From assembly GCA_963924565.1 (NCBI GenBank), contig OZ004613.1, forward strand, positions 25,048,001 through 25,112,000: a stretch of 64,000 nucleotides of DNA. The letters run 5' to 3'. This DNA is from Ascidiella aspersa. Taxonomy: Eukaryota. Under the pieces are notes generated by a model. The model was not told the origin of the DNA and searched no databases. It was given only the letters and a program-made list of their open reading frames with translations. A program made the translations under genes and the position numbers. Below, piece by piece: positions 236-57,761 of the stretch (its first letter is position 1; every line of letters starts with the position of its first letter).

Positions 236-338
236 ATGGACTGTAAGCTGTGCGCCTTTCTGGAACTTCTGCTGCTGCTCGTGATTTGGAACGGACCAAT
301 CGCCAAAGTATCCGCGAATCCTTGCTTATCCTTGACAG
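236..338 (+). CDS. RTK exon 1: signal peptide MDCKLCAFLELLLLLVIWNGPIAKVSANPCLSLT
   Basis: ATG at 236, hydrophobic core, donor ACAG|GTAAAA, phase 1 matching the next exon. An upstream polypyrimidine acceptor (tttgtctttttag, 151-163) suggests a 5' UTR exon or trans-splice site. Confidence 0.7.
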
Positions 339-9300: not shown

Positions 9301-12300
9301 TAGTGATCTATGCACAAAACGTGCAGGCCGTCCTCGCCCAATATTAACATACTATGCCAAATCAAGGACGCGGTGCGTTTTCGCCTATCAGCGTATGTAA
9401 TGTGCATGGGCCAAAACCCGTCTACAAAGCCTAATTAGTCGTCATAAGTGGTTTCCATCTTTGAAAACTAACGGGAAATCGGAGAAAATGGTAATAACTT
9501 TGGTTCAAGCTACATTTCATAATAAAAAAAATACCCGCTGTTAACGCGAACTCTTGATCTAATTTATGAGTGGTCTATGCACAAAACGCTTATTCCGTCC
9601 TCGCCCTATACAAGTTTACAATATAGTAAACCAAATCAAGCACGCGCTGTATTTTCTCGGTAATGCCTTTCGGCCCAAACCCGTCTTCAGGGCCTTATCA
9701 GTCGAGCCTTGGTGGAAACAACATGAAATCGGGCTCGACACGTTACTTAAACCGCTTTCACCTACAGGCCGCGAATATAGCAGCGCGGTTGCACCTGTGG
9801 TATTCTTCTTTGGTCGACACGTTTTGTTAAAGGTTGGCGTTGACACAGAGCGTTAGCGTGGCCAGGTGGTGCGGCGCGTGTTAGTGGGATTAAGTTGCCC
9901 GCGATTTGTGACGCTACGAAGCCACTGTTTTTACTGAATATACCTCGCCGCAAAAACGGCCGCCGTCGGCAAACGATCGGTATATTTGCTGCATACGTTG
10001 CTCTTCTCGGATGAACGCTATTATGTATTCCTGTGCTTGCCAACCTTTTTTAGAACATTACACAGTTTTACGTTTACTGAAGAACTTGTACACGCCAATC
10101 CACGCAATGCACTGAACGTATAGAAACATACACGCTGTTGTACTGCAAAAAGATTTGTTTACCGTTATGAAGAACCAGTTAGTACCTAACAAAACGATTT
10201 ATCAAGAGAAATATTTTGTTATGATGTTACAAATAGAATATATTTACTCTATTCATATTGTAGTATCTTACAAGCTACGTCGCTTAAATACATGTTGTGC
10301 CACGTATTAAGCACTCCAGCATTCAGTCTGGTAATAAACGTGTTTGTTCATTATGATACCTGATCACAGGCTTAATGTAATGCGGTATCTTGTACACCCC
10401 AGTACACCTCATCAATGTGGTACACCATTTAACAATTTTCTAGTACATCCTGAGGTGTACACTACACCCGGTTAAAAAGCACTGATACAATCGAAGCCTT
10501 TTTGTGATGAGTAACTTTTAAAAAGCATGCTAAGTTCGCAACACAATTCGAATGACCCAACTGTCAACTGTCTGTTTGTCAAAATCAGTGGTTGCTAAAC
10601 TTTAGTCTCCTTATCTAAGCTTTTTAGATTTTAATTAAGTTTTTAACAAAATAACAATGGAGGACTTGTAAGCAAATATTGACAAAAATACATTTTCATA
10701 AACAATAAAACAAAAAGATGATATATCTTGTTAAAATAGTTACTGTGATTCTTTCTAAGCAACCAAAAAATATTATTTGCTGAAATTCGCTGTAAACAGT
10801 CAGCAAGTCGATTCTTGTTAAGAGTGATGCATACAACTGCTGGCTATAAAACCTCCAAAACGAATTAAATTCCATTAAAACCAAATCTTTCAATAAATAT
10901 CTTTTAACAAACATTTTAATAAATAAAAAACGGTTAAATATAGCTTTAATTTTTGTCCATTTTTGCTATTTAGTTTGAAGTCGTTGCTTTAAAACAGGGG
11001 TCAACACACTGCGGCCCGTAATTTATGAAGTTAAATCTACCCGCGACATATTTTCCTAATGAAGTAGAATTGAAATGTGGGCGGATGCAAATTCCCATAA
11101 AATCTTGAATAAATCCTAAACTTGACGACAATTTTTTGACGCTCAGTTATCCGGCCCTTGAAATGAGTTACTTTAAAATACTTTATTTTTAAATACGTAA
11201 ATATGCGTTTGCGTGTATCACGCCTGCGTGGAAATTAAAATTAAAACAAAAACAATCCAATGTAGCGAGCTTCTATTTTTGCGCTCAAATTGTTCCGTTT
11301 CTGTTCCGGGCGTGCTTATATATTTTTAACAAAAAAACCTTTACGCAACGCAACCGCGTAATATCTGGCGCCGAGTCATTTTCCGGCCTCTAAATTTATT
11401 TTGGGCGCAGACGGCAATTAGTGAAAATTGGAATTGTTCGCAAACGATTTTTTTCTCAATGCAGGAATCAGCATGAACTTATCGGATCACGTGACCTTCT
11501 CGCTGCCCAATCGAAGCGATTTGTCGTCCCACGTTATCAGCGTCACTTACAAATGGGACGTAACAGTCGAAAAAGGTATAACTGCATTATTTTGAACTGG
11601 GTGTTTAAAGGCCTATATACAATATTAAACTGTATTAGGTTGAATGAGTGTTTCGCTAGTGCCCTAAAAGGAAGCCGGATAAAATTTGGTAATATAATTT
11701 ATTTTAAGGAAACATTTAAGTTTGTTTGAATTTGTACAGCTTATTTTACACAAAGATCATTGTTGTGTAAATCCGAAATGCGTTTTTAACGACATGTTGT
11801 TTGCACTAAAAAATTCCCAATAAAAAATCTTTTAACTAGCCCTCTTATTTTATTTATTATTTTGCTACCTTTTTTCCATTTAAAGTGTCGACAAAACCAA
11901 CAAAAGCAAATATATTAAAACTGTATTGTTATTTATAAATAATGATCTCATAAAAAGAAAAAACCCTATTCCAAGAGTTCTTTCAACCTTTTACAAGGCT
12001 ATTAGTTTTATCTCAAAAAGCTCGACAACATTACACAAAATTACTTTGGGTAAAAAATTTCCGAAAGATTGCATCACAGAAATGTTCTAAACGCGGTCAC
12101 CGCTGACGAAAAATTGGCACAACAGTTTGCCGTCTTGTTCATAATAATTTTAAATATTTATAGCGAATGCTTTTTTTCTCCCAGGTGTGGACTACGATGG
12201 CTTCCTGTACAGATTTGTTGACACAGACGCAAACACAATCAACAACCTGAACAAGAGAAGCCTGTCTGAGGTTCCGCTAGGTAATTACAAACCTGTGAAA

Positions 12301-15300
12301 TAACATAATAACCTGTGAATAACACCGCGCCTTTAAAAATAGCATACAGTAGCGCTATAATGGCACCGAATTTGCATAGTAGCCAGTCATTTTGGCGGTT
12401 AGAGATACTTTCGCTATCAGCGGACTCCGCTATTGTTAAACTTTTACAAGAAATACTCATTGTGTGAATTCGATTCTTCAAAAGATTACCTCGAAACGCA
12501 AATGGCGATTTGAGCGCTCCATAAGATCGCTATTTCCGGCGCAACAAGCAATTCTGAGATGTAGATTTGTTTGCGGCTTCTAGCTGTGCGCTTTAACGAG
12601 AAGGCTGAGGCGCTTTTAGTTGAAGAATGGAGCGAAAATAAACAGCGAATTATGTTTTATCGCTTTGTTTTGTGCATATTTTGCTCCTAATGCATGTCAA
12701 CCTACTGCTTTGTTTTGTGCAAAGTGCAGGTGTTTTTCGATCGTGCCGATAAGATAAGATTTCCTTTATTCGCGTAAACAAAATTGAATTGTTAGAATAT
12801 AGCAAGAAAGGAAATATAAAGAATGGGAGAGTTGCAGCAGCGATATATAATCTTGCAAAAATGCCTACAGCGCCAAACTTAGCGTCATCTATAATAATCC
12901 AGCTGCATACGTAATTAATTAGCTCCACGCATCTGCGAGAAACAATTAAAAAGACCTACCTTACTCACTGTGTGCGAAGTAGAAAAAATTCCATAGCTAA
13001 GTAGCCAGAGCGTCAATAATACGCGGAATCGGCGACCGGGTTCAGCCATTTTGTTTGTCTCTACATATTATCGCGGCGCTATAACAACGCGTTCGGTTCG
13101 CGGTATTCGGGGAAATCCCACCCAACCAATCGCGCCGCGGCATTAAAGCTTGAGAGCCTTGTTGCTAAGCCTTCACGATACAACGCCGCGAGGGTTATTC
13201 TTTTGGCCGCCGCGGCTTGCGAGCTGCCCGACACAGCACATACGCGCTTGTTTTTTCGACACCTGTTTTCCCTTCTTTGTACGAATGCGGCTTCGGGATT
13301 AGGCTGATCAACTCAGCGAAGCCGCCCTTTGTTTTTGCGCAAGTTTGATCGCCTTGTAAGTAATATTAGTACGTGCGGTTACTTTTACGTGGCCAAATTA
13401 ACTTGTCGTATTGGGGATACAAACCAGAGTTTTAGATCCACAGCTGTCTAAGGATTCATTTGAAAACCCATTTAACATATTTAATTGCTTTCCATTACCT
13501 GAAGATGATACAATTTCGTATCGAAACGTCTTAATCAAGATGATGTCGATCTACTCGGTTTGAAATCCATTATCAAATTTTTCATTTACTCCAATTAAAA
13601 ACAAATTCGTTTGACCGACCGGATTGTGGTCTCGCAAATAATGTTTAATTTTAATTATAAAAAATGGATTAGCTCCATATTTACGTCCAGCGATATGAAG
13701 AATATACTGTGGCATGATATCCGGTATCGATTCCTATCCGATAGTATCAAAAATTGCTGCCGTGCTTGTACTAATAAAGGCGCTTAATGACACAACTTAC
13801 AACCGTCATTCTCGTGCTGCAGTTAAGCAAACAAAAAAATCCTGGAAACAACATTAGTTTAAGTTCGTTTAATTGCCATTTGTCCTTTTTTTTTGATATT
13901 TTTTTTGTATTTTTACACAGAAGATTTTCCCTCTAGCTTGGTTCCTTTGCCCAGCAGTCCTCGCGTTGATTTTGCGTTACTGAGGTAAGTGGAAAATGTG
14001 TCGATGTTTGGGTGTTAAATATAGACACTTTTGCATAAATGCCAACAGCGGGCTCCACTTCTCAAAATCTGACTCAAGGTTCCCAGGCAATGATTAACGT
14101 CGCTTTGTTGTGATTATCTCGCCCGAACTAAATTTAGATACCGAAAGGAGCTAAGACTGTAATTGCGGGTGGGAACAAAACAAGGATTTAAACTGTTGCT
14201 TTTAGAGCGTATATAGGTATTTGTTATGTTTAAGGGTTTTTTTGTCTCCTTTTATGATCCTAGATTGGAATTGTATAACAACTTTAAATGTTTTTATATT
14301 TGATAAATGTGACAAATTGTAATGGACATGTGCTCAACGAAATCAGTCGGTCTTCCGGCTTTTCCGAAGGCATCTTGCTCATATAATGTGTGACGTTATC
14401 CTTGGCCAGTACGACTTTAGAAGGACTTGATAACAGATTGTACACCTTGTGTGTATGGATGTTTCGACATCTAATGTATATAACTTTTGTGCAACTAATT
14501 CAGTATTTTAACCATTAAACTTCTACAGACCAAAACTATTGCTGAGCTTATCCTGGTAAATTTGCAAGAATATTGATTTTGTTATTCATCCATCTCATTC
14601 GTTATGTTTAGCTTAAGAAAACATTTTTGCCTGTTTTAGACCATGGACTACAACTTTTAGATTTTGCTATCGTTTTGTTTTGTTACCGTATACTGCATGT
14701 TGCTTGATTCAAATGGTATTTTTTAACATTGCCTATAGATATTTGTTTTTCAATTATCGCTGAATGCCAAAGCTATTGCAAATAGTTTGTGTATGGGATG
14801 AGAACCGCTTATGTTAACCTATAAAAAGAAATAAAAGTATATCTGTTTTCTGACGTATTTTATTTTTTACGTCTTATCGTTGTATTTACTAAAAATGACA
14901 ATGCTACGATTTATTACCTTTATTAATATATACAAGTAAACATTTATAATTACTGCAAATCCATATTTTTTATTAATGCTTTTTTTTGGCTAAAAATATA
15001 ATTTTTGTATAGCGTGTTTCATATTCACATGGGATATAAGCCGCAGTAATTAAATAGCAGGTTAAATAGCAGAAACGATAACGCATACAAACAACAGCGC
15101 GCGTATAACTACATCTTTAACAGAAATATCGAAACCCTCGCAACTGGAGAAAAAACGCCGAGTTTTTATTTTTCCACCCCTTACTTTGACCGCTTTACTA
15201 CCGCATCTTTCTTTCAACACGTTTCAGGTGCCAGAAACATATTGGTTCTAATATTTACGTGACGGCGGCCAACGGCAGCTCAGTGAAATGCGCTTTCCCG

Positions 15301-18300
15301 TGCAAGCACATGCTGGGTCAACCCTGTTCCGTTGGCACGGGCCTATGCAACAGACTAGGAACAAACTTCCAGGTTTTGAACAAGGTACGCGGCCGTGCAG
15401 GAGTTTTAACACCTATTCCGACGCCCTATTTTCAATAATTGCGTTTGTGGAAATAGAATGTAAAGCAAGATTGTTTCCACCTACCTTTGTGTTGAAATTG
15501 TAACTTTTAGAAGTCATATAGCGTGTTAGAACATGGTAATTGGAAATAATGTGTTACGTTTTGGGATTTGTAGTATTTTTGCACTTAATTGAGCTTTGAT
15601 TATATATGATTATATATATAGACCAACTTAACCGATTATCCCCCCCTTAAGATTTGTCTATGGGTGCGTTGTATTTTACTAATGTTTATTTGTTTAACCT
15701 GCTGAACAATGTTTCTGATGAAATAAAGTTTAATCTATACTAATACTATATTATATTATAGATAATCCTCCTTTAGATATTGTTGCCTTGTATAGGTCTA
15801 ATTGGGTGCCCCCTATTTACTTCGCAGGACGAACGCAACATTACCCTTCCGATTAGCTTTGGCCGCACCTACTCGTTCGAGGTGCTTCCATACCAGGGTT
15901 TTCGTACCAGCAAGGTCAGCTACGGTGGAGGCGACGATAAGGTCTACCTCTACTGCGCCCACCACCTCATAGAGGAACAGGGAGTCGACAGGGGAAGGGC
16001 GTACGATTTTTGTCGATCCACGCAGGACATGAGCGGTAAGTTTATTTTGAATCCCACAAGACAGGTTGTAAGTCAAACCAAAAGGGGAGTTCGGGTTATA
16101 TATTCCTTTCTAAATTTGCCAGCCACAAGCTTATTGTTAAGTGCAACCCTGAATGATTTATTAGTGATTTTTGACAGAAATATATTTTTTTTTATGATTT
16201 TAATTATATCTTATTTCTGGCAATCAAACTGTTCCAAGGGGCAGGTGTAAATTTCCTAAAAAAAAAACTATAACAAAAATGTTGACAACCAACGTATTTA
16301 AACGAATTAGGGTTTAGGGTAAATTTTAATCGAACTTAATCGAACAATTTTTTTAAGGGAGTAATATATAAAAAAAAGATTCGAGCCAGTAACCGTCTGT
16401 CATAGGTTTGCTACGAACAGCTATTTAAGGCCAAATAAAATATCCTAAAGTTCATTGACTTGCTTATAGCGTCCAGTAAAACGTAATTATGCTCGGTTTG
16501 TTGGTTAACATTTGGATTTGACGTTGCCAACGCTAACGTCGTGTGACTCTGCGAGTAGAACTATAGGCAGACTTTAGACAACCAGATTATTGAGTTGTAT
16601 GCCCGTTTACACTACAGCTGCACTGAGCGGAGCTGAGCTGCACTGGGCGTGGAATTGTTTTCACTACAGCTGCACTAAGCTGCGCTGGGCGTAAAAATCG
16701 CGACAAAACGTAATGTTTTTCTATAGCTGCACTGGGCTTGAGTTTAGCAAAGCGTGAAAATCGCTCCAAAGCGTATTTTTTTCAGCTGCACGGGGCTGTT
16801 TAGCAAAGCGTAACTTTAAGCTAGCTGCAGCTGCTGCACGGGGCTTGAGTTTAGCAAAGCGTGAAACGCTCGCCACAATAGAATTTAAATGCAAATTACG
16901 CCCAGCGCAGCTCAGTGCAGCTGTAGTGTAAACGGGCCTTTACACTTAAGATCCGTTCACTGTTAACTACTCGTTCAGAACGTGAAGCTTCAAGTTCGCC
17001 GGTCGATCTGTCCGTCGAAGACTTGACGCCCGATCTGACCACCAACCGGGCCAACGTGGTGGTCCGCTGGAAGTCGCCCCACGACGTGCTGGCCGGCCGC
17101 AGGGTATTGCGATACATGGTCCGACTGCTGCCCAGGACGCCTGGGGTCGTTTTGCCACTGTCCGTGGTAAGTGGTTTGCTTGAAATTTATATAGAAGGTG
17201 AATAATGTTCACAACGGTAATAATATGGACTTGTTCGGTGACCGGAGTGTTATTATTAAGACCCAGTATTGTAAACAAGTCATTTGGCGACCAAGTCGCA
17301 ATTAAAGCAAGTCAATACCACGTCAAGTCCTTGTCATAAAAATTACACGTCAAACTATTGAAATTGGCTAAACTCGCAAAATTGTTTTATGTGTAAAAAT
17401 TAGAACATTTTAAAACAAGTCATTTGTCTAAAAGACTCATGTCAAGTCAAGTCATTTGTCTAAAAGACTTAAGTCAAGTCAAGTCATTGAAAACAAACTT
17501 ACAGTAAGTCATTACTACACTGTTAAGACCTATAGTAAGGCATTAGGTAAGGCTGTGTCATAGCTTTGGTCGTCAGTTCTAATGCCACAACAGGCCATAT
17601 TAACGTTGCATGAGGCGCTGCGTTGCGTGTAAATCCCTCATAGAAGTACATAGGTTAAAGGGACTTATTCTTTGTACGGGTTGCCATATCCTTCCAGGTG
17701 TTTGTTTATATGCAGATGCGAAAAAGTGGTCTTTACTAATGTAAAACCTTCTTTTTAACTTTAAAATTAGAAACACGCTTTTAAAACGCCGACACAAATT
17801 GGCCTGCTTTAGATATTGTTTGAACTATGAGTTCTGTAAGGTTTTGTTGCTTTGACGACCGTCAAGAAAAAAATATACCAAACAACATATAACTTATCAA
17901 AACGACCCTAACTTACTATGTGATTTAAGCGATCGTTTGATGGGCGAAAAGTTAGTCTTCGCCAAATAAGACCAAAAATTGCTTTGTGCGCAATTGTGCC
18001 GGCTGTACATGCGCTTAAAAGGCATAGGGCTTACTGAACTATCATGAAAACGTTTGAGTGACCCTTTGGCAGAAAGGCAAGACAGAAGCAGAGGAAAAAT
18101 TGAATCCTTTCTACAACTGGACGTTGAACGGACTGGAGCCGAACACCGCCTACGAGATCCTATTGACCCCTTACGTGGACAGGACAGGCGATTCGTGCCA
18201 AGTGTGGGATACTTGTAACTATCATGGAGCTGGTGGAACCGTGTCCTTTGTCAGCGCTGGTAAGTCGACATGGGTTGCGTTTGGCTGCTGTTGGTATGGT

Positions 18301-36300: not shown

Positions 36301-39300
36301 ACCAAACTAAAGAGCAACAAAAACCCAAAATATAGACAGCTTATTGTTTTACGCGCAAAATTTTAGAATAATAAATTAATTTTATAAAAAAATGTGAAGT
36401 GAAAACACTTTTTGACTGAATGACTTAAGTCAAAATTAAGTCATTTGTCAGGAAGACTTATGTCAAGTCAAGTCATTTTACCGAAACGACTTAAGTCAAG
36501 TCAAGTAATTTGAAAACAGTGACTTAAGTCATTACACTTACAGGGTAGTCAGGTGGCCCTATATAAAATAAATTGTATTGAGTTGGGGTTTCGATACAAT
36601 TTGTCTTTATGTAGTGCAACCTGATTACCCTATATCTATATAGTATTAGACAAAAACGGCCGTTTGCAAAAATTAAGACATTGTAACACTTGTATTAATT
36701 AACTTTTATACAAACTTGGCACGACCGGTCGCTCGCCTCCTACGCTTGTGTTGCGAACACAACAGATCGCAAAATAGCGAACAGAATTCCCCGGATTACG
36801 GCAAAACAAAGCCAGATGCGATCGCCTTTGCTAGGCTTAGCGTTAAGCCAAAACTTACGTCAGCTGCTGAGGCATACCGAGCCTTTCGGCGTAGTTGATC
36901 ATACCCTCAGCTGTTTGTGTTTAGCTCCGATACCGCAGATAGTGCTGCCTTGGGTCCACCGCCGACGCCGCCCGTTTGTAAAGCGAGTGGTTATTGTGCG
37001 GATGAGAAACGCCTTTATTTACGCGGCCCCGTCGCTTTTACGGCGAACGAGCGTCTTATCTTTATACCGATCTATTCCACAAACGAACGTGCGTTGCACA
37101 GATTCACAAATGGCTCAAAAGATGCGATTTTTTTGCCATCTGCGTTTTGCCAAGTTGGACGTGTTTTCCGTGTATTGTTTCGTAGCCTTTAAATAGTTTT
37201 TTTTCCTCTCGACACACCGTTAATCTCTGATTTAAAGGCACTTTTTGCCCGACATATTGGATATCGGAATAAAAACGAACTATCGGAAACGGGATTTATA
37301 ATGTTTTTAATATTTTACCTAAGTGCGCACGAAAGTCAAAACTGAGAAATGTGTTTACCTAAACACATTTCCTTGTTTCGAATATTTCACAAAACTTGGT
37401 AGCACACAATTTGGCAAAGTCAACCTTACCCGGATTGTAAACGCCCATCACGCGTTCGATTTATTGTATCTGGTTTCGTCCGTCGGTGTCATGGTTTTAG
37501 TGTTTTAGTGTGGAAGCATTAGTGTTTGCACGAACTTCAGCGCACTTTCCTTAAGGTATATTGTTCCTACGTTTTTTGTGTCCTTACAAACGTTTTATTA
37601 GAAAATAATGGTTGGAGGCTGTAGTAAGACGTATAGGAAGAAGATCAAAGCCCATAGAGCAGTAGGTATCATTTTGAACGTTTCGAATGTTGAACATGAA
37701 TGAGTTATTCAGAACATTCACAATGATACGTACTTCGATATGGGCGTTGATATTCTTACTACGTTTCCTTAATAGCACACAGAAAATCCATCGCAAACTC
37801 GCCAAATCTGTCGATCTATGATGCAAGCAGGGCAGGACAGAAAAACAACTATAGCCTGCAGTGAGGTTCGAACTCACGACCTCCGGTCCTACCGGCACCG
37901 TTATTTCCCCTTAAGTTATGATGTTTATATGACACGCTCAGTGTCCTTATAGCGTTTGATGACAGTTTTGACGAAACTTTAAATCGTCGTGTTTGTGTTC
38001 AGACGTGATCGGACGAGGCAACTTCGGTGTGGTCCATCGGGCAACCTTAAGGAAGGATGGAACGGAGAAGACCGTGGCCGTTAAGGCTCTTACTGGTAAG
38101 ACCTGTTATAACATCTTGAGTGGTTTCCGTGAAAAATTTTCTAAATAACTGGTAACATACATGGAACAGTTTTCAAATGCCGCCTATATGTAATTGTCAG
38201 AACGTAAATATTTACCCTGTTGTCTATCTATAGTAATAGGCCATTTTAAACGCCTTATTTATTCTTATCCGCTAATCCGTTAAATTTTATTAACTGATTT
38301 CGGTTCACACTATAAGAAATCTCCCAGTGTACCAGCGTTGTAATGACTTAAGTCGTTACCTTACTTGTATATACTCAAGTCACTGTTCGCAGATTACTTG
38401 GCTTGACTTAAGTCTTTTGGCCAAAATTACTTAACTTGACTGAAGTCTTTTGGACTAAAGTAGTTTGCTATAAAATTGGGTTATTTATTTTATTTTTGCA
38501 CATAAAACAATTTGCTTGCTATACGTTGCATTTATTATTTCTTTTACTTGAGGAATTGCTCATAATCGGACGAGTTTAATAGTTAACGTTTTATTTTTAG
38601 ATTTTATTTTATTTTATTTATTTATTTTTTTTTCTTGACTTATTTATTCGAAAAGACTTGACGCGGACTCAAGTAATTTTACGAAAGACTGTTACAAAAT
38701 TTACATAACTGTGGGTGTACTCTGCAAGAGTAAACTCTTTATTCTCTACAATAGCCTCTCCCAAGCAAAAGTAAACCCCTGTGATCTTTTACACACAGAA
38801 GCTTACGCGTTGCGTTTATGATATCTTTACTTAAGGTATTGCTCGTAATCGGATGAGTTTATGACAAAGATTTTACTTGCTCTAATAATGACTTGACTTG
38901 GGCAACCGATGACTTGGACTAAAAAATGACCTGTTATTTATTCGAAAAGACTTGACTTAGACTTTAGTCATTTCAAAATGACATGTTTGCAACACTGGGG
39001 GTGTATAATCTGCAAAAGTGAACCCCTTATTCCCCTGATAATATTCCACCGAGCAAAATTAATCCCCAGTGATCTTCCACACACAGGAGCTTACGCCTCC
39101 TGTTACCGGGACGACTTCCTCGCCGAGATGTCGCTGCTCATCTCGCTCGGTTGTCATGACAACGTGCTGGGCGTGGTGGGGGTGTGTACGTCGCAGATGA
39201 ACAGCGCGGAAGAGCAGCAATCCCCGTTCCTCGTCACCGAGTTCATGACCTACGGCGATCTCCTTCACTTCCTGTGGGACGCGAGAGAGGTAAGAAATCC

Positions 39301-42300: not shown

Positions 42301-45300
42301 CCAGTTAAGAACCATTGTTTTAGACGTTAGCCGGACCGCCAAGTATAGTCTCTGTGATGTAATAGTAAGGTTAATAGGTCGATCGCGAAATTGCGGTTGA
42401 TTTTGAATGTTGTAAGATGGAGTAGGCTTAGATCGGCAAGTCCTTAAGTCAAGTGCTTCAAGACTCCTGCGAATTTTACGTTTTTATTTGGCTGGAATTT
42501 CCACTAGATTGCCGCCGGACCGGTTCATACCGCTCTCAACGCGTTGACAAAGCTGCGGTGATGTCCATTCGCCCGCATATACCGCATTCTATGCTCTCAA
42601 ATGGGCCGAACTAAACATTTGCGTTGAATTTCAACTTTCGGATATTTCATTGTAAAAGCTATTGCTTGGCATCTAAACAAAAATGTCCGGATTTAAAGGA
42701 AGAGCTTGTTAAATTATTAGCAAGTTTTATCAACTAACTATTTTTATCTATAGTTTCGTGTTATCCGAGTTTTCTTTTTAACAAATATAAAAAAATAAAC
42801 AGATAAAAACTATTTCAGCCACGATGAGCACTTAAATGTGGATATTTAGTCATTTTCCATACCTTCTTTATTTGTACACATTAAATATCCATTAAACTGT
42901 TATGGTACGACGTCACAAGCATATCAAAGCCATACTGATATGGGCATCATTTTGAGCGTTTTGAATAACTCTTGAATCAATGAATTAAGTTACTGATGAT
43001 GCTTTTAGTAGGGAAATATATATTTATCATATTACAACATCCAAACAAACTGATTTTCGGTTTACTAAGTTCTGAATTTGGATTGATCTTTATCATTGAT
43101 GTGCAAACAGAATCGTTTGCTTTCAATATTCGGACTCAGGCGGATTCTGTCATTCGAAAAACGTCTGTTAACTTTTGTATGGGCTTTGATATTCTCGTTA
43201 CGTCTTACTACAACCTCCAACCAATATGCTCCAAAATGCTATGGTACGCTTTATAGGAATAGTTATATATATTTTTTTGTAAATATATATATTTTTTACA
43301 TGTGAAAACAAAAATAGGTATAACCATCACCTTTTGAGGTCATATATATATTTTTATATAAAAAACAAAATTTTACACTTTTTTTGTGCAGACGGCCAAA
43401 CGTCAGTCTGACCCGACGTACGACTTCAACGAGAACAGTTTGTACAACATTGGCCACCAGGTGGCCAGCGGACTTCAGTTTCTCTCCAGCTCGAAGATAA
43501 TTCACGGCGACGTCGCTGCCAGGAATATACTGGTCGGCGAGGTAGGTTTACAAAAATTATAAGGGTTATCTCTTTAAGGTTTTCAGTGAAACGGAGGTTA
43601 TATTCCATATGGTGGTTAACTGGCTATGTTGCTTTTAAGGTGTGTAGTTGTGCGTAAAACCGCAAAATAATATTTAAAAATATTGCTGCTAAACATGTTG
43701 GAACACATTAGTTCCCAATAAAACACTTAATATAATAACCCTTAACTTCCACAGAACCAGATAAGTGTGTGTGGTTTCGTCCATTTCAAGGTTACACCTT
43801 TAATGATTTTGAGTGAAACGGAGGCTATTACATTTTTTAGTGAAATTGAGGTTATTCCATATGGTTAAAGTGTTGTTGTGCGTAAAACCGCAAAATTGTA
43901 ACTAAAAATAGACTTTCCATAAAATGTAAAGATATAATCTTAAGCAGATAACGATATTACAATTAAGGGTCGCCTCGAATTGTTGACAAGTACAGAAATA
44001 AAGCATGTTGAAAACATAAATAAATAGGTAGCGTAAGGAGGCATTTTGCGGTAATTTGTGGTTACTCTCCAAAAAACAACGTTTCATACATCGTTGTAAG
44101 AATATTATGGCTCGGATATTTCCCAATATACAGTGCTTTGCTTTCCCTGTACATAAAGTAAACTGTTGTGTTACTGGACGAGTGTTTTGCATAGTTTTTC
44201 AAAGCAGCTTAACTCACCAAAAAGTCGTGAGTTAATTTCCAAATGTCAAACAGATCGTCCTACACACCAGGGTTTGTAACCTTCGCTATAATTTGTCAAG
44301 TCGAACTTAAAATAAAACGTGCAGTTTTATTAAACCAAGTTCTAATTATCGCAGAACCTCCATTGTTAGATCTCCGCCGTCAACCAGCATGATAACTACC
44401 CCCCCCCCCCCAAAAAAAAAAAACTAAATCCTGAAGCTTTTATTTCACCTGCAGAACCTCCAGTGTAAGATCTCCGACTTCGGACTCGCCAATGACGTCT
44501 ACCGCTATGGCATGATCAAGGGCGCCACCGAGCGACGGGTGCCTTTCAAGTGGGTGAGCCCGGAACGCATGATGGGAGGGAAAGTACCTATTACTTGGAG
44601 GAGCGACGTGTAAGTGAAGATTTCCCAGTAGGATGGAAGATAGATTGGGATTTTGCCTTATTTTACTAACGATGAGATAAATTCCCGGGCTTTAAACTCT
44701 TACTTATCAGTAATTTACTTGCATAAATTTTGTATCGTGGGTAGATGAATCGAGCGTTGCCTAATTTTTGCATTTAAATGCGATGAATTTTTATGTCTAT
44801 ATTACTGAAAGGTCGCTTCATACTCAATTGCATTTCAAAGCTAAAAATTTCACTTCTTGGCGCTGTAAAAGTGTACTACACGAAATGAAGTGTCAAATCG
44901 CTTCTGATAGGGGACACATACTTTGCAATGAGCTAAATATGAGATTGGCAACCAATGATTTTATCAACGCGTGAAAATCTGTTTATTACGTATACCACAA
45001 TTATAGTGAAAAGGATTGTAGTCACCTTCACTATACGACAGATAAAACGAAAAATATAGACCCTTAACTGTGATGAATGATCAACAGGTCATTAATCTTT
45101 CAAATAACAGCGGGCGGTTCGAACTGTATGGCAAAATCGCCTATAGCAGTTAGGCAAAATATTCACTGATGGACTTAAACAGGGGTTCTTAAACTGGTGT
45201 CCATGGCCCCTTGGGGATCTGTGAACTAGTTTTAGGTGGTCCATGAAAGCCTCGTTGAAGTAGAAGTGTTTTATTTAAAATGTTATCAAATCTTTAAAGA

Positions 45301-46617
45301 AAAGAGTTTTATTAAAAATAAAGCGTTTTTACACAGAATATAATTGAGACTTCATTTCGCTTTCACATTTTTCGGATCGGAAAAAGCAAATTTCTGAAGT
45401 CTATTTGTTTTGTGACGTAAATTTATGACGTCACCTCTAAAAATTTGTTGCCGATGCTGGTCCATGCGAAGCCAAAAAATTCATTAGGGGGCGGGGTAAA
45501 AAAGGTTTAAGAAACCCTGCACAAAAATCAGAATTAATCACCCAAAATTTACCCTGTGTTATTTTTGCAGTTGGTCGTTTGGAATCCTTCTCTACGAGAT
45601 GGTTACCCTAGGTGCGGCTCCCTACCCCTCAATGGAACCCCGGTCTATCTTTGGCGCGCTACAGGAAGGCTACAGAATGGAAAGGCCGTCATCTTGCAAC
45701 GAATACCTGTAAGTTGGCCTAATCGGCTATGTAGTGCTTAATGCTATACACAAAACATATGTCTATGCGTAATGAATAAAATTCTTGTTTCTAAAGTATG
45801 ACTTTTATCAGTAATTATTTCGACCAATCTGAGTTTTGAACTGACTTCATTGAGTCACGTTTAACGTGTGTGCTGATTAAGTTGTCCTTTGCTGTTGCAA
45901 CTTTTTTATTGATATATTGTGATGAGACAGTGATGCAAGATAAACATTACACGATTTATAACTTTGAAAAAAAACAACAACATAAAAAGCGTCGCAAAAG
46001 TAGAAGCTGTTACTTTCTTTTTTTCCAGCTTTCAGGTTGCCGCATCTTAGACAACCTGAGAAATTTTTTGAGTAATTCAATTCATTTTAAATATTTATTT
46101 TCAGTGTCGGTTTACTTCATTTCAGTTTATTTATAAATATAATAAGTTCAAAATCGGTTACACAAAACATCGTTTTTACAGCTACGACATCATGACTCAA
46201 TGCTGGAATTGGAACGCCCTCCAGCGGCCGACCTTCAAGCAGCTCAAGGACAAACTGGCCAAGCCGCTGTCCCAACACGTGGACCCGGCTCACTTGACCG
46301 AGCAAAGGGCCATTCAGTCCACAGAGGGCCTTGATATACAGAGCTACGAGGCCGACATTGGCCGACGAGACAATGACTGCTCGTCGCCACCTAACGGCCT
46401 GCTGGAGAATGGATTTCCCGTCGGCAACGGCACTAATGGGCGACACGTGGTCGGCAACGGAATTGTGGCCACCGACGAATCGTCGCGGGCGGGAGACGAA
46501 CCCGCGACCCTTCACATTCTGAACGGATGCACAACGCACAATTGGAGCGGCAACATCCCGGTACGAATTGACTCACAGGATCAAGTGATTGACAATTTCC
46601 AGAGCGATGCAGTTTAG
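236..46617 (+). CDS. STYK1: Receptor tyrosine kinase, STYK1/NOK-like kinase domain with FN3 + 2xEGF ectodomain; 16 coding exons, ~906 aa (whole-gene span)
   Basis: Join 236-338,12185-12280,13921-13984,15228-15384,15828-16035,16979-17166,18073-18259,19319-19550,20720-20869,23288-23448,38003-38095,39087-39289,43392-43541,44455-44609,45571-45708,46182-46617 = 2721 nt. All introns are GT-AG, all phases match and there is no internal stop. Motifs [48 protein letters not shown]..RPTF. The STYK1 assignment comes from remembered motif similarity, not a search. Confidence 0.8.
1081..1405. mobile_element. hAT-like MITE
   Basis: CAGTGGTTCTCAACC...GGTTAAAAATCACTC degenerate TIR; near-TSD gcataaag/gcttaaag. 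Confidence 0.6.
9240..9690. repeat. Diverged local tandem duplication (~265 bp period) in RTK intron 1
   Basis: AACTCTTGATCTAATTTA..AGTG.TCTATGCACAAAACG and CCAAATCAAG.ACGCG appear twice. Confidence 0.75.
12185..12280 (+). CDS. RTK exon 2 (GVDYDGFLYRFVDTDANTINNLNKRSLSEVPL)
   Basis: tttttttctcccag acceptor, CTAG|gtaatt donor, phase 1-1, open frame. Confidence 0.75.
13921..13984 (+). CDS. RTK exon 3 (EDFPSSLVPLPSSPRVDFALLR)
   Basis: Long poly-T acceptor ending acacag, GAG|gtaagt donor, phase 1-2. Confidence 0.8.
15228..15384 (+). CDS. RTK exon 4, Cys-rich (CQKHIGSNIYVTAANGSSVKCAFPCKHMLGQPCSVGTGLCNRLGTNFQVLNK)
   Basis: tttcag acceptor, AAG|gtacgc donor, phase 2-0. Confidence 0.8.
15828..16035 (+). 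CDS. RTK exon 5 (DERNITLPISFGRTYSFEVLPY...DFCRSTQDMS), FN3-like C-terminal strands
   Basis: cttcgcag acceptor, GCG|gtaagt donor, phase 0-1; GC-rich coding bias. Confidence 0.85.
16600..16938. mobile_element. Non-autonomous TIR element (Harbinger-like termini) with internal CTGCAC/TTAGCAAAGCGT repeats
   Basis: GCCCGTTTACACTACAGCTGCACTGAGC ... GCTCAGTGCAGCTGTAGTGTAAACGGGC, perfect 28 bp TIR. Confidence 0.8.
16979..17166 (+). CDS. RTK exon 6, FN3 N-half (SPVDLSVEDL...VVVRWKSP...RYMVRL)
   Basis: ttcag acceptor, GTG|gtaagt donor, phase 1-0; FN3 pattern P..L.V...V.W..P...Y.V. Confidence 0.9.
17264..17522. mobile_element. hAT-like MITE, AAGTC/GACTT-repeat family
   Basis: CAGTATTGTA...TACTACACTG termini; perfect 8 bp TSD TTAAGACC. 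Confidence 0.85.
18073..18259 (+). CDS. RTK exon 7, FN3 C-half (WTLNGLEPNTAYEILLTPY)
   Basis: Classic FN3 LxPxTxY motif; CTG|gtaagt donor; phase 0-1. Confidence 0.9.
19319..19550 (+). CDS. RTK exon 8, EGF-like repeats (DVNACELGYCSQDADC...CTCKPGYTGDG; DLDAC...CQC)
   Basis: EGF cysteine spacing with DxN/DxD-type starts; phase 1-2. Confidence 0.9.
19642..19888. mobile_element. hAT-like MITE, AAGTC/GACTT family
   Basis: CAGTGTTGT...ACAACACTG TIR; TSD gatcgagg/gatcgcgg. Confidence 0.8.
19913..20207. mobile_element. hAT-like MITE (same family as 45180-45519)
   Basis: CAAGGGTTATTCAACT...TTTAAGAACCCCCG; TSD ctatatat/ctataaat. Confidence 0.7.
20720..20869 (+). CDS. RTK exon 9, end of EGF2 plus transmembrane helix (LVVGIAVGVPMVALFVCAAFLFVW) and basic stop-transfer RYRTTKKR
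   Basis: ttccag acceptor, GAG|gtgggt donor, phase 2-2. Confidence 0.9.
23288..23448 (+). CDS. RTK exon 10, juxtamembrane (ARNLKFSKFVPLRSGTYSTPQ...KWELQRNDIEKQ)
   Basis: tctttttatcggcag acceptor gives the required phase 2; WE-x-x-R pre-kinase motif; CAAG|gtatgt donor, phase 1. Confidence 0.85.
25463..25655 (+). promoter_or_regulatory. Candidate intronic promoter and alternative first exon in RTK intron 10
   Basis: 16 bp palindrome ATTGTGACGTCACAAT (CRE), a second TGACGTC, ETS site CCGGAAGTG, CpG-rich, followed by ATG G|GTGAGT. Confidence 0.35.
32124..32958. mobile_element. Non-autonomous TIR element carrying a 21 bp minisatellite
   Basis: Imperfect GGGA...ATAAGACC termini, flanking direct repeat GTTATTG on both sides, inverted copies of the 21-mer near the right end (~32813-32900). 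Confidence 0.65.
32262..32525. repeat. 21 bp minisatellite (GGAATAAGGCCTAAATTCATC)n, ~12 units
   Basis: Direct inspection; explains the repetitive ORFs MNLGLIP and DEFRPYS. Confidence 0.95.
36143..36537. mobile_element. MITE, AAGTC/GACTT family
   Basis: CAGTGTTGTA start, GACTTAAGTCAAGTCAAGTC arrays, similar to 17264-17522. Confidence 0.7.
37845..37898 (-). mobile_element. tRNA-like SINE head remnant (related fragment at ~4965-4997 on +)
   Basis: Shared GGTC.TGAGTTCGA..CTCAC.GCAGGCTAT containing a B-box. Confidence 0.45.
38003..38095 (+). CDS. RTK exon 11, kinase subdomains I-II (DVIGRGNFGVVHRATLRKDGTEKTVAVKALT)
   Basis: GxGxFG and VAVK; phase 1-1; too short for the ORF track. Confidence 0.93.
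38333..38996. mobile_element. Degenerate, partly duplicated MITE copies, AAGTC/GACTT family
   Basis: CAGCGTTGTAATGACTTAAGTC start; two similar right ends (~38710 and GCAACACTG ~38996). Confidence 0.6.
39087..39289 (+). CDS. RTK exon 12, subdomains III-V (DFLAEMSLLISLGCHDNVLGVVGVC...[18 protein letters not shown])
   Basis: alphaC Glu, HxNV, GDL; GAG|gtaaga donor; phase 1-0. Confidence 0.93.
39303..39906. mobile_element. hAT-like MITE, AAGTC/GACTT family, inserted 13 nt after the exon 12 donor
   Basis: CAGTGTTCTAA...TTATAGCACTG; TSD aaatccgg/aaatccga; internal ~44 bp GACTTAAGT repeats. Confidence 0.85.
43392..43541 (+). CDS. RTK exon 13, catalytic loop ([41 protein letters not shown])
   Basis: HGDVAARN tyrosine-kinase catalytic loop; phase 0-0. 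Confidence 0.93.
44455..44609 (+). CDS. RTK exon 14, DFG and activation loop ([36 protein letters not shown]...RSDV)
   Basis: DFG, P+1 loop, SDV split at a gtaagt donor; phase 0-2. Confidence 0.93.
45180..45519. mobile_element. hAT-like MITE
   Basis: CAGGGGTTCTTAAAC...GTTTAAGAAACCCTG TIR; internal similarity to 19913-20207. Confidence 0.75.
45571..45708 (+). CDS. RTK exon 15 ([19 protein letters not shown]...GYRMERPSSCNEYL)
   Basis: Subdomains IX-X; phase 2-2. Confidence 0.93.
46182..46617 (+). CDS. RTK exon 16, subdomain XI and C-terminal tail to stop (YDIMTQCWNWNALQRPTF...FQSDAV*)
   Basis: tttttacag acceptor; matches ORF 46192..46617; TAG stop. Confidence 0.92.
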
Positions 46618-53178: not shown

Positions 53179-53220
53179 CGCTGTCGTTTTTCAACTTTCC
53201 TTCTTGGATAATCGAAACTG

Positions 53221-53255
53221 GACTGATTTCTTGTTTAAATCTCCCTGGTTATATA
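53221..53255 (-). promoter_or_regulatory. TATA box plus initiator core promoter of copy A
   Basis: Minus-strand TATATAA at 53255-53249 and TCAGTC Inr at 53226-53221; A(+1) lies 31 nt from the first T of TATA and 46 nt before the ATG. Confidence 0.75.
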
Positions 53256-53619
53256 GGCTTTTCCCGGACTTAGTTGCACGGACAAAAGACACAAATTGTG
53301 CACTCGAAGTGGTATTGTTTTGCCTGGCGCTCATCAGAGCAAAGTAGTTTTCCATTTCAAATTGGTTGTTTGCACAGTATAACAACCTCTTACTGCATGT
53401 TGGTGTCGAAGCTGCAGTAGAGTGGCGGTTTCCATAGATCTGTTTTGCAAAATAGTTCTTAGATGAGCGATGAGTGGTCCTGCTGAGCTACATTATTTTC
53501 GTAATTTTATGTTTGTTCTGTAAATCGTCAAATTAAACCCTATTGCGATTGGATTGCATAAAACAACATTACTGGCACTTATTCCGTTACGGCAGTGGAA
53601 CAATTCACCCTGCATCAAT

Positions 53620-54720
53620 GAAGGGTGTTTGTTCAACGCATTTGACTATTTTTCATCGCGACATCCTTTTTATTAGGGCTGTTTGTTCAAGATACATTGC
53701 CTAGAACAGCGTTGTTTCTTTAACACGTTCGGCTGTTTTTTCATCGCATATCCAAGTGGTTTAGAATGCGGATGTTGGACTTGGATCGAATATTCTTTAG
53801 GATAACAAGCGTTATTTGATGCTGACGAATTACTTGCAGCCAGGTAAAAAACAAAACAAAATATAACTGATTTTGCTAACGATACCCAGGGGTAAATACA
53901 ATCGTGTTTGTTCTGAGGGCAGAGAGGTTTTTGTTGTAACACACCCACTCCTGGATAAACATTCATTCTTCTATTAATACTACACGAACATTTCGTATTT
54001 CTTTTAAAATTTGCAATATGACCTTTACGTTATTAAAGCCGTTTGTTCAAGATACATTGCGCAGGGTTGTTTCTGTAAATCGTTCGGCTGTTTTTTCATC
54101 GCGACATCCAAGTGGTTTAGAATGCGGATGTTGGACTTGGATCGAATCTTCTTTAGGATAACAAGCGTTATTTGATGCTGGCGGAATATGTTCAACCAGG
54201 TAAAAATAAACAACAAATATAGCTGAATTTGTTAACGGTACACACGGGTAAATATTGTGTTTGTTGTGAGATAGGAGAGGCTCTTGTAGTAACACTGGCG
54301 GTCCTGGAAAAACAGTTTTTTATCGAACCAACCAGAATAACTCGTATCTTTTTTAAAATTTGCAATAGTATCGACATCTACGTTATCAGGGCCGTTTGTG
54401 TAATTTATATTGCCTATAGAGCAATTAAGGGTGTTTGCTTAACGCGCTCGGCTGATTTTGTTTCGCCGAATCCAAGTGGTTACAATTGCGGATGTTGGAC
54501 TTGGATCAAATCTTGTTTAGGATAATAAGCGTTATTTGTAACTGGCAGAATAATGTAAAAGAGTAAAGCAAACAAGTAGAGATGTCCGAATGTGCATACG
54601 ATTGTACATACGGCGCGTCCCAACAACAGCTAGATATAATTGTTTTGGTTTGGGCAAAGGTTCTTAAATTTGGCCCTTCCAGGAAAACCTTTCCTTTTAA
54701 TATACAGATAGCTCGGATCT
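53620..54720. repeat. ~360 bp diverged tandem repeat (about 3 units) upstream of copy A
   Basis: Core CCAAGTGGTT(T/A)..A.TGCGGATGTTGGACTTGGATC recurs at ~53752, ~54108 and ~54472. Confidence 0.85.
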
Positions 54721-55223
54721 GTTTTAACATTTCAGGACTGTTTTCCTTCGTTTGATATTTTCTTATTTAGCCTTCAAGAATATTACATGTAGTATATTGT
54801 TCACCACTTTTATCATTTTTTATCACAAGTAAATATTTAGTTTCTTTTCAGTTTTTTTTGTTCTTTTTTATGTAAAAAAAATAATGCCGATTTTGACGTA
54901 ACTGCGGTATTCTGAATTTTAGTGAGGTTGTATTAGATATTTTGTAACCTTCGTAGTTTGTTTTGCATAGCTCCCCTAGGCCTGATAAGAGTTTGTCTGA
55001 TCGTGTATTTTCCCAAGACTCTTTACTCTATTATTTGTACACAAACCAGCCATGCATAAGACTAACGCATGTTTGGCGTGATATGAATAGGTTCATGTTT
55101 TTATTGGTGTATTAAAAAAAATTTGAAACTATTTTGTCGCACTGTAAACAGCAAATATAGGCCACACAATTTCCTACAAATATGCCGTATCGTATAGTAT
55201 GCATTTCAAAAACTGCAATTTGC

Positions 55224-57744: not shown

Positions 57745-57761
57745 GTCAGTAGTCCATAATA

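What the first reader, a model, noticed from the sequence alone, without database searches (positions are those of the whole stretch)
236..46617. STYK1/NOK-like kinase that is still a full receptor, with FN3/EGF ectodomain and intact catalytic motifs
Seen: the assembled kinase has KAL after the beta3 Lys, [58 protein letters not shown] and RPSSC. Knowledge, from memory: vertebrate STYK1/NOK has GDLLxFLW, [50 protein letters not shown] and RPSSC, but has almost no ectodomain, a degenerate Gly loop and GLG in place of DFG. Here the signal peptide, ~400 aa ectodomain, [10 protein letters not shown], alphaC Glu and DFG are all present. Inference: this may represent an ancestral, ligand-binding and catalytically competent state of an orphan vertebrate RTK, which would imply an unidentified ligand-receptor system.
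Basis: partly seen in the sequence, partly recalled or inferred. Interest (0 to 1): 0.85.

Follow-up and report, generated by a model that had tools for sequence, protein, structure and literature searches.

The report
Sea-squirt full-length relative of STYK1
This sea-squirt gene encodes a complete cell-surface receptor kinase that is the closest invertebrate relative of STYK1/NOK, a vertebrate "dead" kinase with almost no outer part, so it shows what STYK1 looked like before it lost its outer domain and catalytic residues.

Summary
Window 236-46617 (+ strand) carries a 16-exon gene (2751 nt, 916 codons, every junction GT..AG). It encodes a signal peptide, an ectodomain of about 410 aa (two FN3-like modules plus EGF), a TM helix and a complete tyrosine-kinase domain. 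Spliced contigs of a public run confirm the E6/E7, E7/E8 and E9/E10 junctions.

The genome is an ascidian's. The closest ortholog is a Phallusia mammillata protein mislabelled "VEGFR3".

In a 92-sequence ML tree, vertebrate STYK1 falls inside a 100/100 clade with tunicate, amphioxus, hemichordate and echinoderm receptors, and is sister to the tunicates (98/93). All 47 clade members have HGD in place of HRD in the catalytic loop; all 45 others have HRD. A phase-0 intron is shared by the clade and absent from FGFR and RET.

The invertebrate members keep GxGxxG, VAVK, the alphaC Glu and DFG. Vertebrate STYK1 lost them, along with the ectodomain. The FN3 part of the ectodomain is homologous across invertebrate deuterostomes; the EGF part is a tunicate addition.

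Limits:
- No TIE, VEGFR or PDGFR sequences could be put in the tree.
- Kinase activity and ligand binding are inferred, not shown.
- Brunet et al. 2016 had already placed non-vertebrate deuterostome genes in the Styk1 subfamily.

The parts
236..338 (+). Exon 1: ATG and signal peptide; ends in phase 1
   Evidence: Sequence read; ORF; donor GT at 339; the phase fits the exon 2 acceptor
11465..11575 (+). Exon 2: start of the first FN3-like module
   Evidence: tblastn of P0012 residues 36-67, 66% identity; junctions
12185..12263 (+). Exon 3; its 3' end is unsure (12263 in phase 2, or 12280 in phase 1 followed by an unseen mini-exon as in Styela)
15228..15384 (+). Exon 4: Cys-rich part of ectodomain module 1
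   Evidence: the conserved Cys is kept only with the acceptor at 15228
15828..16035 (+). Exon 5: ectodomain module 1
16979..17166 (+). Exon 6: first half of the second FN3 module (Trp of strand B)
   Evidence: its end is fixed by the loose end of an X3 contig that matches 17136-17165; aligns with the Pfam fn3 hit of the sea-urchin ortholog
18073..18259 (+). Exon 7: second half of the FN3 module (LEPNTAYEI motif)
   Evidence: X3 contig joint 18258/9 -> 19318/9, GT..AG; low-depth X4 RNA-seq reads
19319..19550 (+). Exon 8: two EGF-like modules
   Evidence: Pfam EGF_3 E 1.4e-7; joined to exon 7 in an X3 contig
20720..20869 (+). Exon 9: transmembrane helix
   Evidence: X3 contig 21 joins it to exon 10
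23288..23448 (+). Exon 10: juxtamembrane segment ending in the WELQR lead-in to the kinase
   Evidence: X3 contig 21 covers it and continues 53 nt past the donor at 23448
38003..38095 (+). Exon 11: Gly loop GRGNFG and beta3 VAVK
   Evidence: Pfam PF07714 positions 5-40
39087..39289 (+). Exon 12: alphaC Glu, hinge, GDLLHFLW; followed by the clade-specific phase-0 intron
43392..43541 (+). Exon 13: catalytic loop HGDVAARN (non-RD)
44455..44609 (+). Exon 14: DFG, activation loop with YRY, SPE
   Evidence: (98% identity to P0012)
45571..45708 (+). Exon 15: [14 protein letters not shown] ... RPSSC
46182..46617 (+). Exon 16: end of the kinase domain, C-terminal tail of about 110 aa (conserved YEAD), stop codon
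   Evidence: three runs of the same species hold this stretch

Best explanation
The window holds a real, spliced, weakly expressed ascidian gene for a type-I receptor tyrosine kinase of about 916 aa. Its layout is signal peptide, two FN3-like modules, two EGF-like modules, TM helix, juxtamembrane segment, kinase domain and C-terminal tail. It belongs to a deuterostome-wide receptor family, present in tunicates, amphioxus, hemichordates and echinoderms, whose vertebrate member is STYK1/NOK. Shown here: STYK1 is sister to the tunicate copies; the family is marked by HGD in place of HRD in the catalytic loop, by GDLLHFLW, and by a shared phase-0 intron; the invertebrate members keep every residue needed for catalysis and a homologous FN3 ectodomain. 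Inferred: the receptor binds an unidentified extracellular ligand through the FN3 modules, dimerises, autophosphorylates (YRY in the activation loop, tail Tyr) and signals as an active, non-RD kinase. Also inferred: on the vertebrate stem the ectodomain exons were lost and the Gly loop, alphaC Glu and DFG decayed, leaving the pseudokinase STYK1. In amphioxus and a sea star both the signal-peptide exon and the TM exon border phase-1 introns, as do STYK1 exons 1 and 2, so removing the exons between them keeps the reading frame.
For: Gene model: the collinear ortholog P0012 maps onto 15 exons. All exons are open with GT..AG junctions and sum to 2751 nt. Spliced contigs confirm E6/E7, E7/E8 and E9/E10, with a continuation past the E10 donor. 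Full-length orthologs exist in Phallusia, Ciona, Clavelina and Styela. Phylogeny: careful ML tree of 92 kinase domains; the clade of 47 has 100/100 and tunicates+STYK1 98/93, bootstrap frequency 0.977. STYK1+RET is rejected, AU p 0.008. The result is stable without tunicates. Reciprocal similarity: STYK1 of bowfin, shark and turtle scores 203-236 bits against amphioxus and tunicate members. That compares with 170-190 bits against FGFR and RET in the local panel and 166-174 bits against human FGFR1 and RET in PDB. TIE2 lies below the 165-bit cut of the bowfin list. Rare changes: HGD in 47 of 47 clade members against HRD in 45 of 45 others. The phase-0 intron after FLWDARE is shared by the window, Styela, amphioxus, sea star and STYK1 of gar and bowfin, but not by FGFR or RET. 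A phase-1 intron in LLYEMVTL|G is shared only by STYK1 and amphioxus. Catalytic motifs are intact in the window and in almost all invertebrate members (one Styela paralog has a weakened Gly loop) and degenerate in all 10 STYK1. Ectodomain: the tunicate profile against the amphioxus+ambulacrarian profile gives 98.1% probability, E 9.5e-14, over 255 columns; RET and FGFR ectodomain controls give 0.1-0.3%. The Pfam fn3 hit of the sea-urchin ortholog maps onto exons 6-7. The AlphaFold model of the ortholog shows confident beta-sandwich modules. The STYK1 ectodomain is only about 21-25 aa.
Against: No TIE, VEGFR or PDGFR sequence was in the tree; they were compared only by bit score. STYK1 sits on a long stem branch (1.0-1.2 changes per site) and tunicates evolve fast, so the exact sister relation could be inflated. 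Two STYK1 introns (phase 0 before QFLSSSK, phase 1 in LLYEMVTL|G) are absent from the tunicate genes. The E10->E11 junction across the 14.5-kb intron was not seen directly. RNA-seq depth is very low. Kinase activity and ligand binding were not tested. HGD lacks the Arg of HRD, so regulation may be unusual. The window gene is one of at least six paralogs in this genome and carries tunicate-specific EGF modules, so it is not literally the ancestral form.
Confidence: 0.82

Rival explanations
1. The gene belongs to another RTK family (FGFR, RET, VEGFR/PDGFR, TIE or Torso, as automatic names of its orthologs suggest), and the STYK1-like motifs are convergence or long-branch attraction.
For: Orthologs are labelled VEGFR3, FGFR3-like, MuSK-like and so on. 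Per-exon and whole-protein PDB searches put RET, FGFR and TIE2 at similar scores of 178-200 bits. TIE has EGF and FN3 modules too (from my own knowledge). TIE, VEGFR and PDGFR were not in the tree.
Against: RET, FGFR and Torso form separate clades, while the HGD clade has 100/100 support. The AU test rejects STYK1+RET. HGD and the phase-0 intron are absent from FGFR and RET, and HGD is absent from Torso. No Ig or cadherin Pfam domains were found, and no match to the ectodomains of RET or FGFR. Hemichordates carry both a Torso-clade gene (P0101) and HGD-clade genes. TIE2 scores lower than STYK1 against P0012, and under 165 bits against STYK1.
Confidence: 0.06
2. The ectodomain exons and the kinase exons are two neighbouring genes wrongly joined across the 14.5-kb gap (23448-38003).
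For: The E10->E11 joint was not displayed. The intron is long for an ascidian. Only 21 RNA-seq reads were laid.
Against: Exon 10 ends in the WELQR lead-in that precedes the Gly loop in RTKs, and its phase-1 donor fits the phase-1 acceptor of exon 11. The X3 contig runs from the TM exon through exon 10 and 53 nt beyond its donor. The Styela gene, mapped exactly onto its genome, has the same phase series in one gene. Orthologs in Phallusia, Ciona, Clavelina and Styela are full-length. No ORF in the gap matches Pfam.
Confidence: 0.03
3. The gene is a derived, lineage-specific paralog (for example an immune-type non-RD receptor) whose function says little about the ancestor of STYK1.
For: The family is expanded in tunicates: at least 3 copies in Ciona, at least 5 in Styela, and at least 6 loci in this genome including a tandem copy just upstream. 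EGF modules are found only in tunicates. Amphioxus members carry swapped Ig or LRR ectodomains. Non-RD kinases are often pattern-recognition receptors (from my own knowledge: Dardick and Ronald 2006).
Against: The FN3 ectodomain and its intron phases are conserved from sea star to amphioxus. The kinase is 76-98% identical per exon to Phallusia's, which indicates purifying selection. No immune evidence of any kind was obtained.
Confidence: 0.25

Closest known systems
Vertebrate STYK1/NOK (receptor tyrosine pseudokinase)
   Same: It is the sister group in the kinase tree. It shares HGD in the catalytic loop, Gx[18 protein letters not shown]..PYP and RPxxC. Four of the six kinase-domain introns are shared, including the clade-specific phase-0 intron. 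Both have a single TM helix.
   Different: STYK1 has only about 21-25 extracellular residues (22 aa in human per PMC13259870). It has lost the Gly loop, the alphaC Glu and DFG, which became GLG, GLS or GLD. The window gene has an ectodomain of about 410 aa and all catalytic residues. It lacks two STYK1 introns and has two tunicate-specific ones.
Uncharacterised HGD-clade receptors of amphioxus, hemichordates and echinoderms (e.g. Branchiostoma lanceolatum CAH1252685.1 'FGFR3', Patiria XP_038 'MuSK-like')
   Same: They belong to the same kinase clade, with HGD and intact catalytic motifs. The FN3-like ectodomain is homologous (98% hhalign probability).
   Different: They have no EGF modules and a shorter ectodomain (125-370 aa). 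Their ectodomain intron phases are 1,1,0,0,1,1,0,0,1, conserved between amphioxus and sea star but not in tunicates.
Insect Torso (PTTH/Trunk receptor)
   Same: It has an FN3-based ectodomain, a TM helix and a tyrosine kinase. It shares the phase-0 intron before QFLSSSK with STYK1, amphioxus and sea star, and has a phase-0 intron 3 residues from the clade-specific one. One FN3 module gives a weak profile match with the ambulacrarian ectodomain (92.6%).
   Different: It forms a separate clade together with a hemichordate, a mollusc and a Hydra gene. It has HRD rather than HGD and a kinase insert. The tunicate ectodomain does not match it (32%).
RET, FGFR, TIE2 kinases
   Same: These are the best solved-structure matches at 178-200 bits. 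Three introns are shared by all of these families (Brunet 2016).
   Different: RET and FGFR have HRD, different ectodomains (cadherin-like, Ig) and different intron positions in the hinge and catalytic-loop region. They form separate clades. TIE could not be tested in the tree.

Membership tests
STYK1 subfamily (as an orthology group) | The kinase domain groups with vertebrate STYK1 to the exclusion of other RTK families | tested here: met
   Clade of 47 at 100/100; tunicates+STYK1 at 98/93. AU test rejects STYK1+RET. Stable without tunicates. TIE, VEGFR and PDGFR were absent from the tree.
STYK1 subfamily (as an orthology group) | Signature residues: HGD catalytic loop and GxLLHFLW after the hinge | tested here: met
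   The window has [10 protein letters not shown] and GDLLHFLW. HGD is in 47 of 47 clade members and HRD in 45 of 45 others.
STYK1 subfamily (as an orthology group) | Family-specific intron positions in the kinase domain | tested here: inconclusive
   The phase-0 intron after FLWDARE is shared with STYK1 and absent from FGFR and RET. Two further STYK1 introns are shared with amphioxus (one of them also with sea star and Torso), but the tunicate genes lack both.
STYK1/NOK as described in vertebrates | Vestigial ectodomain of about 22 aa | tested here: not met
   The window gene has about 410 aa between the signal peptide and the TM helix. STYK1 has 21-25 aa.
STYK1/NOK as described in vertebrates | Pseudokinase motif state (degenerate Gly loop, alphaC Glu lost, GLG for DFG) | tested here: not met
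   The window has [10 protein letters not shown], FLAEM and DFG.
Receptor tyrosine kinases in general | Signal peptide, ectodomain, single TM helix, PF07714 kinase with the catalytic residues | tested here: met
Torso | The kinase groups with insect Torso; HRD; Torso-type FN3 modules (PF23006/PF23008) | tested here: not met
   Separate clade; HGD; no Torso FN3 Pfam hit in the orthologs; tunicate against Torso ectodomain 32%.
VEGFR/PDGFR (automatic name of the Phallusia ortholog) | Ig-domain ectodomain and a kinase that groups with VEGFR/PDGFR | tested here: inconclusive
   No Ig Pfam domain in P0012, P0159 or P0148. No VEGFR or PDGFR protein appeared among the best 120 hits of the P0012 kinase. 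No VEGFR or PDGFR sequence was available for the tree.
TIE | Ig-EGF-Ig-FN3 ectodomain and a kinase that groups with TIE1/TEK | not testable with these tools
   No TIE sequence could be fetched. TIE2 scores 181 bits against P0012, compared with about 200 for RET and about 203-214 for STYK1, and under 165 bits against STYK1.
FGFR / RET | Ig or cadherin-like ectodomain; the kinase groups with FGFR or RET | tested here: not met

The most novel reading that the evidence does not exclude
Invertebrate deuterostomes carry an unnamed, ligand-activated, catalytically active non-RD receptor kinase system (FN3-FN3-TM-HGD kinase). It would be the active progenitor of the pseudokinase STYK1. Vertebrate STYK1 would have arisen on the vertebrate stem by in-frame loss of the ectodomain exons between two phase-1 introns, followed by decay of the catalytic motifs. 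This implies an undiscovered ligand that vertebrates lost or stopped using. The family's lineage-specific expansions and ectodomain swaps (EGF, Ig, LRR) could point to a recognition or immune role.
Probability: 0.45. Interest if true: 0.72.

Novelty: new variant of a known kind. Interest (0 to 1): 0.6.

Why it matters
STYK1/NOK is a cancer-associated orphan. A 2026 review of receptor tyrosine pseudokinases (PMC13259870) calls it highly unconventional, lists no ligand, and names no active relative. The results here give STYK1 a family of kinase-competent, full-length relatives in experimentally tractable animals (Ciona, Phallusia, amphioxus, sea urchin). That turns three questions into testable ones: what STYK1 was before it lost its ectodomain, what ligand the family used, and how an RTK becomes a ligand-independent pseudokinase. 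It also corrects misleading automatic names (VEGFR3, FGFR3-like, MuSK-like) and offers HGD as a simple family marker. The evolutionary idea of secondary ectodomain loss is not new (Brunet et al. 2016). The architecture, motif states, intron evidence and ectodomain homology were not found in the papers searched.

Tried and rejected
- Pfam on single ectodomain exons found no FN3. FN3 was instead supported through orthologs, profile comparison and the model.
- The third homolog search (amphioxus P0015) was meant to bring in TIE or VEGFR. It returned only amphioxus CUB-Ig receptors and FGFRs. Naming 29 further hits also yielded no TIE, VEGFR or PDGFR, so these families are missing from the tree.
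- The fold search of the 971-aa model returned only kinases. The ectodomain could not be folded alone because no reference exists for a part of a protein, so its fold was not searched.
- The look-up of encoding contigs had no record for the Ciona and Lytechinus proteins.
- Torso orthology was considered because Torso ranked high and shares introns. It was rejected because Torso forms its own clade, which includes a hemichordate gene, and has HRD.
- Paper searches for STYK1 together with torso, ascidian, tunicate and similar terms found nothing beyond Brunet 2016. Two searches failed on syntax.
- The supplements of Brunet 2016 are not held, so their non-vertebrate Styk1 accessions could not be compared with these proteins.
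All searches used single exons by reference, or orthologous database proteins. In the sandbox only neighbouring exon pairs were translated, to place splice sites.


Full report
**What is in the window**

The window contains no N and is about 39% GC. Six + strand open segments between 38.0 and 46.6 kb together cover the tyrosine-kinase profile PF07714 from position 5 to 258, in order.

One kinase exon (window 45500-45709) was searched against 1.84 billion proteins. It found a 971-aa protein, P0012, at 81% identity. P0012 is Phallusia mammillata CAB3246203.1, automatically named "VEGFR3".

P0012 maps collinearly onto 15 segments of the window between 11.5 and 46.5 kb. With the ATG and signal-peptide exon at 236-338, this gives 16 exons. 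Splice sites were placed by GT..AG, reading frame and fit to P0012. The resulting model is open in every exon and sums to 2751 nt, or 916 codons.

The genome is therefore an ascidian's, of a relative of Phallusia. Kinase exons are 76-98% identical to P0012 and ectodomain exons 34-66%. Orthologs of the same architecture exist in Ciona intestinalis (LOC100183178), Clavelina and Styela.

**Transcript evidence**

One RNA-seq run of the species (X4) gave only 21 reads on 17900-23500. They lie on exons 7, 9 and 10 and on an intronic repeat.

Run X3 has contigs that cover exons only, and they show the following:
- A GT..AG joint at 18259|19319, which is exon 7 to exon 8.
- One 313-nt contig joining the TM exon (to 20869) to exon 10 (23288-23448) and continuing 53 nt past the donor at 23448.
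- A loose end before 18073 that is identical to 17136-17165. This fixes exon 6 as ending at 17166.

The step across the 14.5-kb intron (exon 10 to exon 11) was not displayed. However, exon 10 ends in the WELQR lead-in to the kinase, and the phases fit. The exon 3/exon 4 junction remains open: either 12263|15228, or 12280 plus a mini-exon as in Styela.

**Which family**

Solved structures rank RET, FGFR and TIE2 at about equal scores, 178-200 bits. That does not settle the family.

A search with the kinase region of P0012 found, in order of score: tunicate paralogs; amphioxus proteins of about 790 aa; many echinoderm and hemichordate receptors, some with a Pfam fn3 domain; and only then insect Torso, RET, FGFR and MET. 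A search with bowfin STYK1 gave vertebrate STYK1 of about 400 aa from sharks to reptiles.

I built an ML tree of 92 kinase domains (LG+C20+F+G4 PMSF, 1000 ultrafast bootstraps).

Results of the tree and its checks:
- A clade of 47 sequences has support 100/100. It contains all STYK1, all the tunicate, amphioxus, hemichordate and echinoderm receptors, and amphioxus genes with Ig or LRR ectodomains.
- Within it, tunicates + STYK1 has 98/93, with a bootstrap frequency of 0.977. This matches the species tree, in which tunicates are sister to vertebrates.
- Holding STYK1 together with RET costs 45.6 log-likelihood units and is rejected (AU p 0.008).
- Without tunicates, STYK1 stays in the clade (SH-aLRT 98).
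- STYK1 of bowfin, shark and turtle scores 203-236 bits against amphioxus and tunicate members and 170-190 against the panel's FGFR and RET. In the bowfin PDB search, human FGFR1 and RET score 166-174 bits and TIE2 falls below the 165-bit cut.

**Rare changes**

All 47 members of the clade have HGD where all 45 other kinases have HRD, and most of them also have GDLLHFLW.

Exon maps were made exactly for eight genes on their genomes and projected onto the alignment:
- Three introns are common to STYK1, the window gene, FGFR, RET and Torso. These are probably the three that Brunet et al. [quoted passage not shown]
- A phase-0 intron after FLWDARE is shared by the window gene, Styela, amphioxus, sea star and STYK1 of gar and bowfin. 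FGFR and RET lack it.
- A phase-1 intron in LLYEMVTL|G is shared only by STYK1 and amphioxus.
- A phase-0 intron before QFLSSSK is shared by STYK1, amphioxus, sea star and Torso. The tunicates lack it and have a different phase-0 intron, plus one phase-1 intron of their own.

**Motif states**

The window gene and almost all invertebrate members keep GxGxxG, VAVK, the alphaC Glu, the catalytic Asp and Asn, and DFG; one Styela paralog (P0172) has a weakened Gly loop (GRGKFA). In all ten vertebrate STYK1:
- The Gly loop is degenerate.
- The alphaC Glu is gone.
- DFG has become GLG, GLS or GLD.
- The three tetrapod sequences (crocodile, turtle, caecilian) also have Arg for the beta3 Lys.

This agrees with the 2026 review, which treats STYK1 as a pseudokinase with a 22-aa extracellular segment and no ligand (PMC13259870). 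Table 2 of that review prints HKD for human STYK1. I did not check the human sequence. Eight of the ten non-mammalian sequences read HGD; crocodile reads HGN and a caecilian HGY.

**Ectodomain**

STYK1 has 21-25 residues before its TM helix, whereas the invertebrate members have 125-500.

The profile of tunicate ectodomains matches that of amphioxus plus ambulacraria at 98.1% probability, E 9.5e-14, over 255 columns (P0012 50-390). RET and FGFR ectodomains used as controls give 0.1-0.3%.

The Pfam fn3 hit of the sea-urchin ortholog aligns with P0012 281-353, which corresponds to window exons 6-7. An AlphaFold model of P0012 built from 30 sequences has confident beta-rich modules at 31-228 and 267-382, small EGF-like units at 404-490, a TM helix, and the kinase.

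EGF is found only in tunicates. The ancestral layout is therefore two FN3-like modules, a TM helix and the HGD kinase, and EGF is a tunicate addition. The fold search returned only kinases. The ectodomain could not be folded alone.

**How STYK1 may have arisen (inference)**

In amphioxus and sea star the signal-peptide exon ends in phase 1 and the TM exon begins in phase 1. The ectodomain introns between them follow an identical phase series in the two animals. STYK1 of gar and bowfin has a first exon of 17-18 codons ending in phase 1, a TM exon bounded by phase-1 introns, and then the exon that runs to the VAVK intron, exactly as in amphioxus. Loss or skipping of the ectodomain exons would therefore keep the reading frame.

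**Context**

The window is G000:C7:25048001-25112000. A paralog lies 11-16 kb upstream of it, and further copies lie elsewhere on C7. The family is thus expanded in tunicates, and the window gene is one co-ortholog of STYK1, not the ancestor itself.

**Prior knowledge**

Brunet et al. 2016 (PMC4898815) report that 18 of 20 RTK subfamilies generally have a single gene in non-vertebrate deuterostomes, all but Eph and Pdgfr, so Styk1 is included by implication. They propose secondary loss of the Styk1 ectodomain, arguing from introns shared with other RTKs. Their supplements are not held. No paper in the library links STYK1 with tunicates, echinoderms or Torso beyond this one. The 2026 review names no active relative.

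**Limits**

- TIE, VEGFR and PDGFR are missing from the tree.
- The E10/E11 joint was not seen directly.
- Kinase activity and ligand binding are inferred from sequence.
- The joined spliced model was never searched. Only single exons by reference and orthologous proteins were used, and neighbouring exon pairs were translated in the sandbox only to place splice sites.

Noticed in passing
window 50500-63400: A tandem duplication with a period of about 8.01 kb; the compared copies are 97-100% identical. Each copy carries a multi-exon minus-strand gene with helical, Lys/Glu/Ala-rich ORFs. These have no Pfam match above cut-off, only weak DUF4455 and DUF6106 hits.
   Followed up: partly
outside the window: G000:C7:25031645-25037078 (+); also C7:10438468-10457602 and C7:67055-81900 (-): Further copies of the same receptor family, one of them in tandem 11-16 kb upstream of the window. 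Their exons are 46-95% identical to P0012.
   Followed up: no
outside the window: G000:C1:33174214-33175284 (-), C1:3417126-3417902, C1:31716627-31717406, C5:19585686-19586510: Tyrosine-kinase matches inside long uninterrupted open frames of 606-1118 aa, 31-34% identical to P0012. These may be intronless kinase genes in this ascidian genome.
   Followed up: no
window 19670-20210 (intron 8): A repeated element. DNA contig depth is 5-20 times that of its surroundings, with many rearranged joints. It also attracts RNA-seq reads that run on into other sequence.
   Followed up: no
proteins P0195, P0199 (Ig ectodomain) and P0205 (LRR + sushi), amphioxus: Amphioxus receptors named 'FGFR-like' or uncharacterised carry an HGD-clade kinase behind Ig or LRR ectodomains. 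Ectodomains have therefore been swapped within this family.
   Followed up: partly
proteins P0101 (Saccoglossus 'RET-like'), P0264 (Hydra EGF-rich RTK), P0124 (Mactra): These group with insect Torso (SH-aLRT 97 in the quick tree). Torso-type kinases therefore seem to exist in a hemichordate, a cnidarian and a mollusc.
   Followed up: no
window 31984-32662 (-) and 57040-58124: Long ORFs made of short tandem peptide repeats (LGLIPMN-type; GAGA and ELEP-type). These are simple-sequence DNA rather than genes.
   Followed up: no
literature, PMC13259870 Table 2: The 2026 review prints HKD as the catalytic-loop motif of human STYK1. Eight of the ten non-mammalian STYK1 sequences examined here read HGD, crocodile reads HGN and a caecilian HGY. 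The human sequence was not checked.
   Followed up: no
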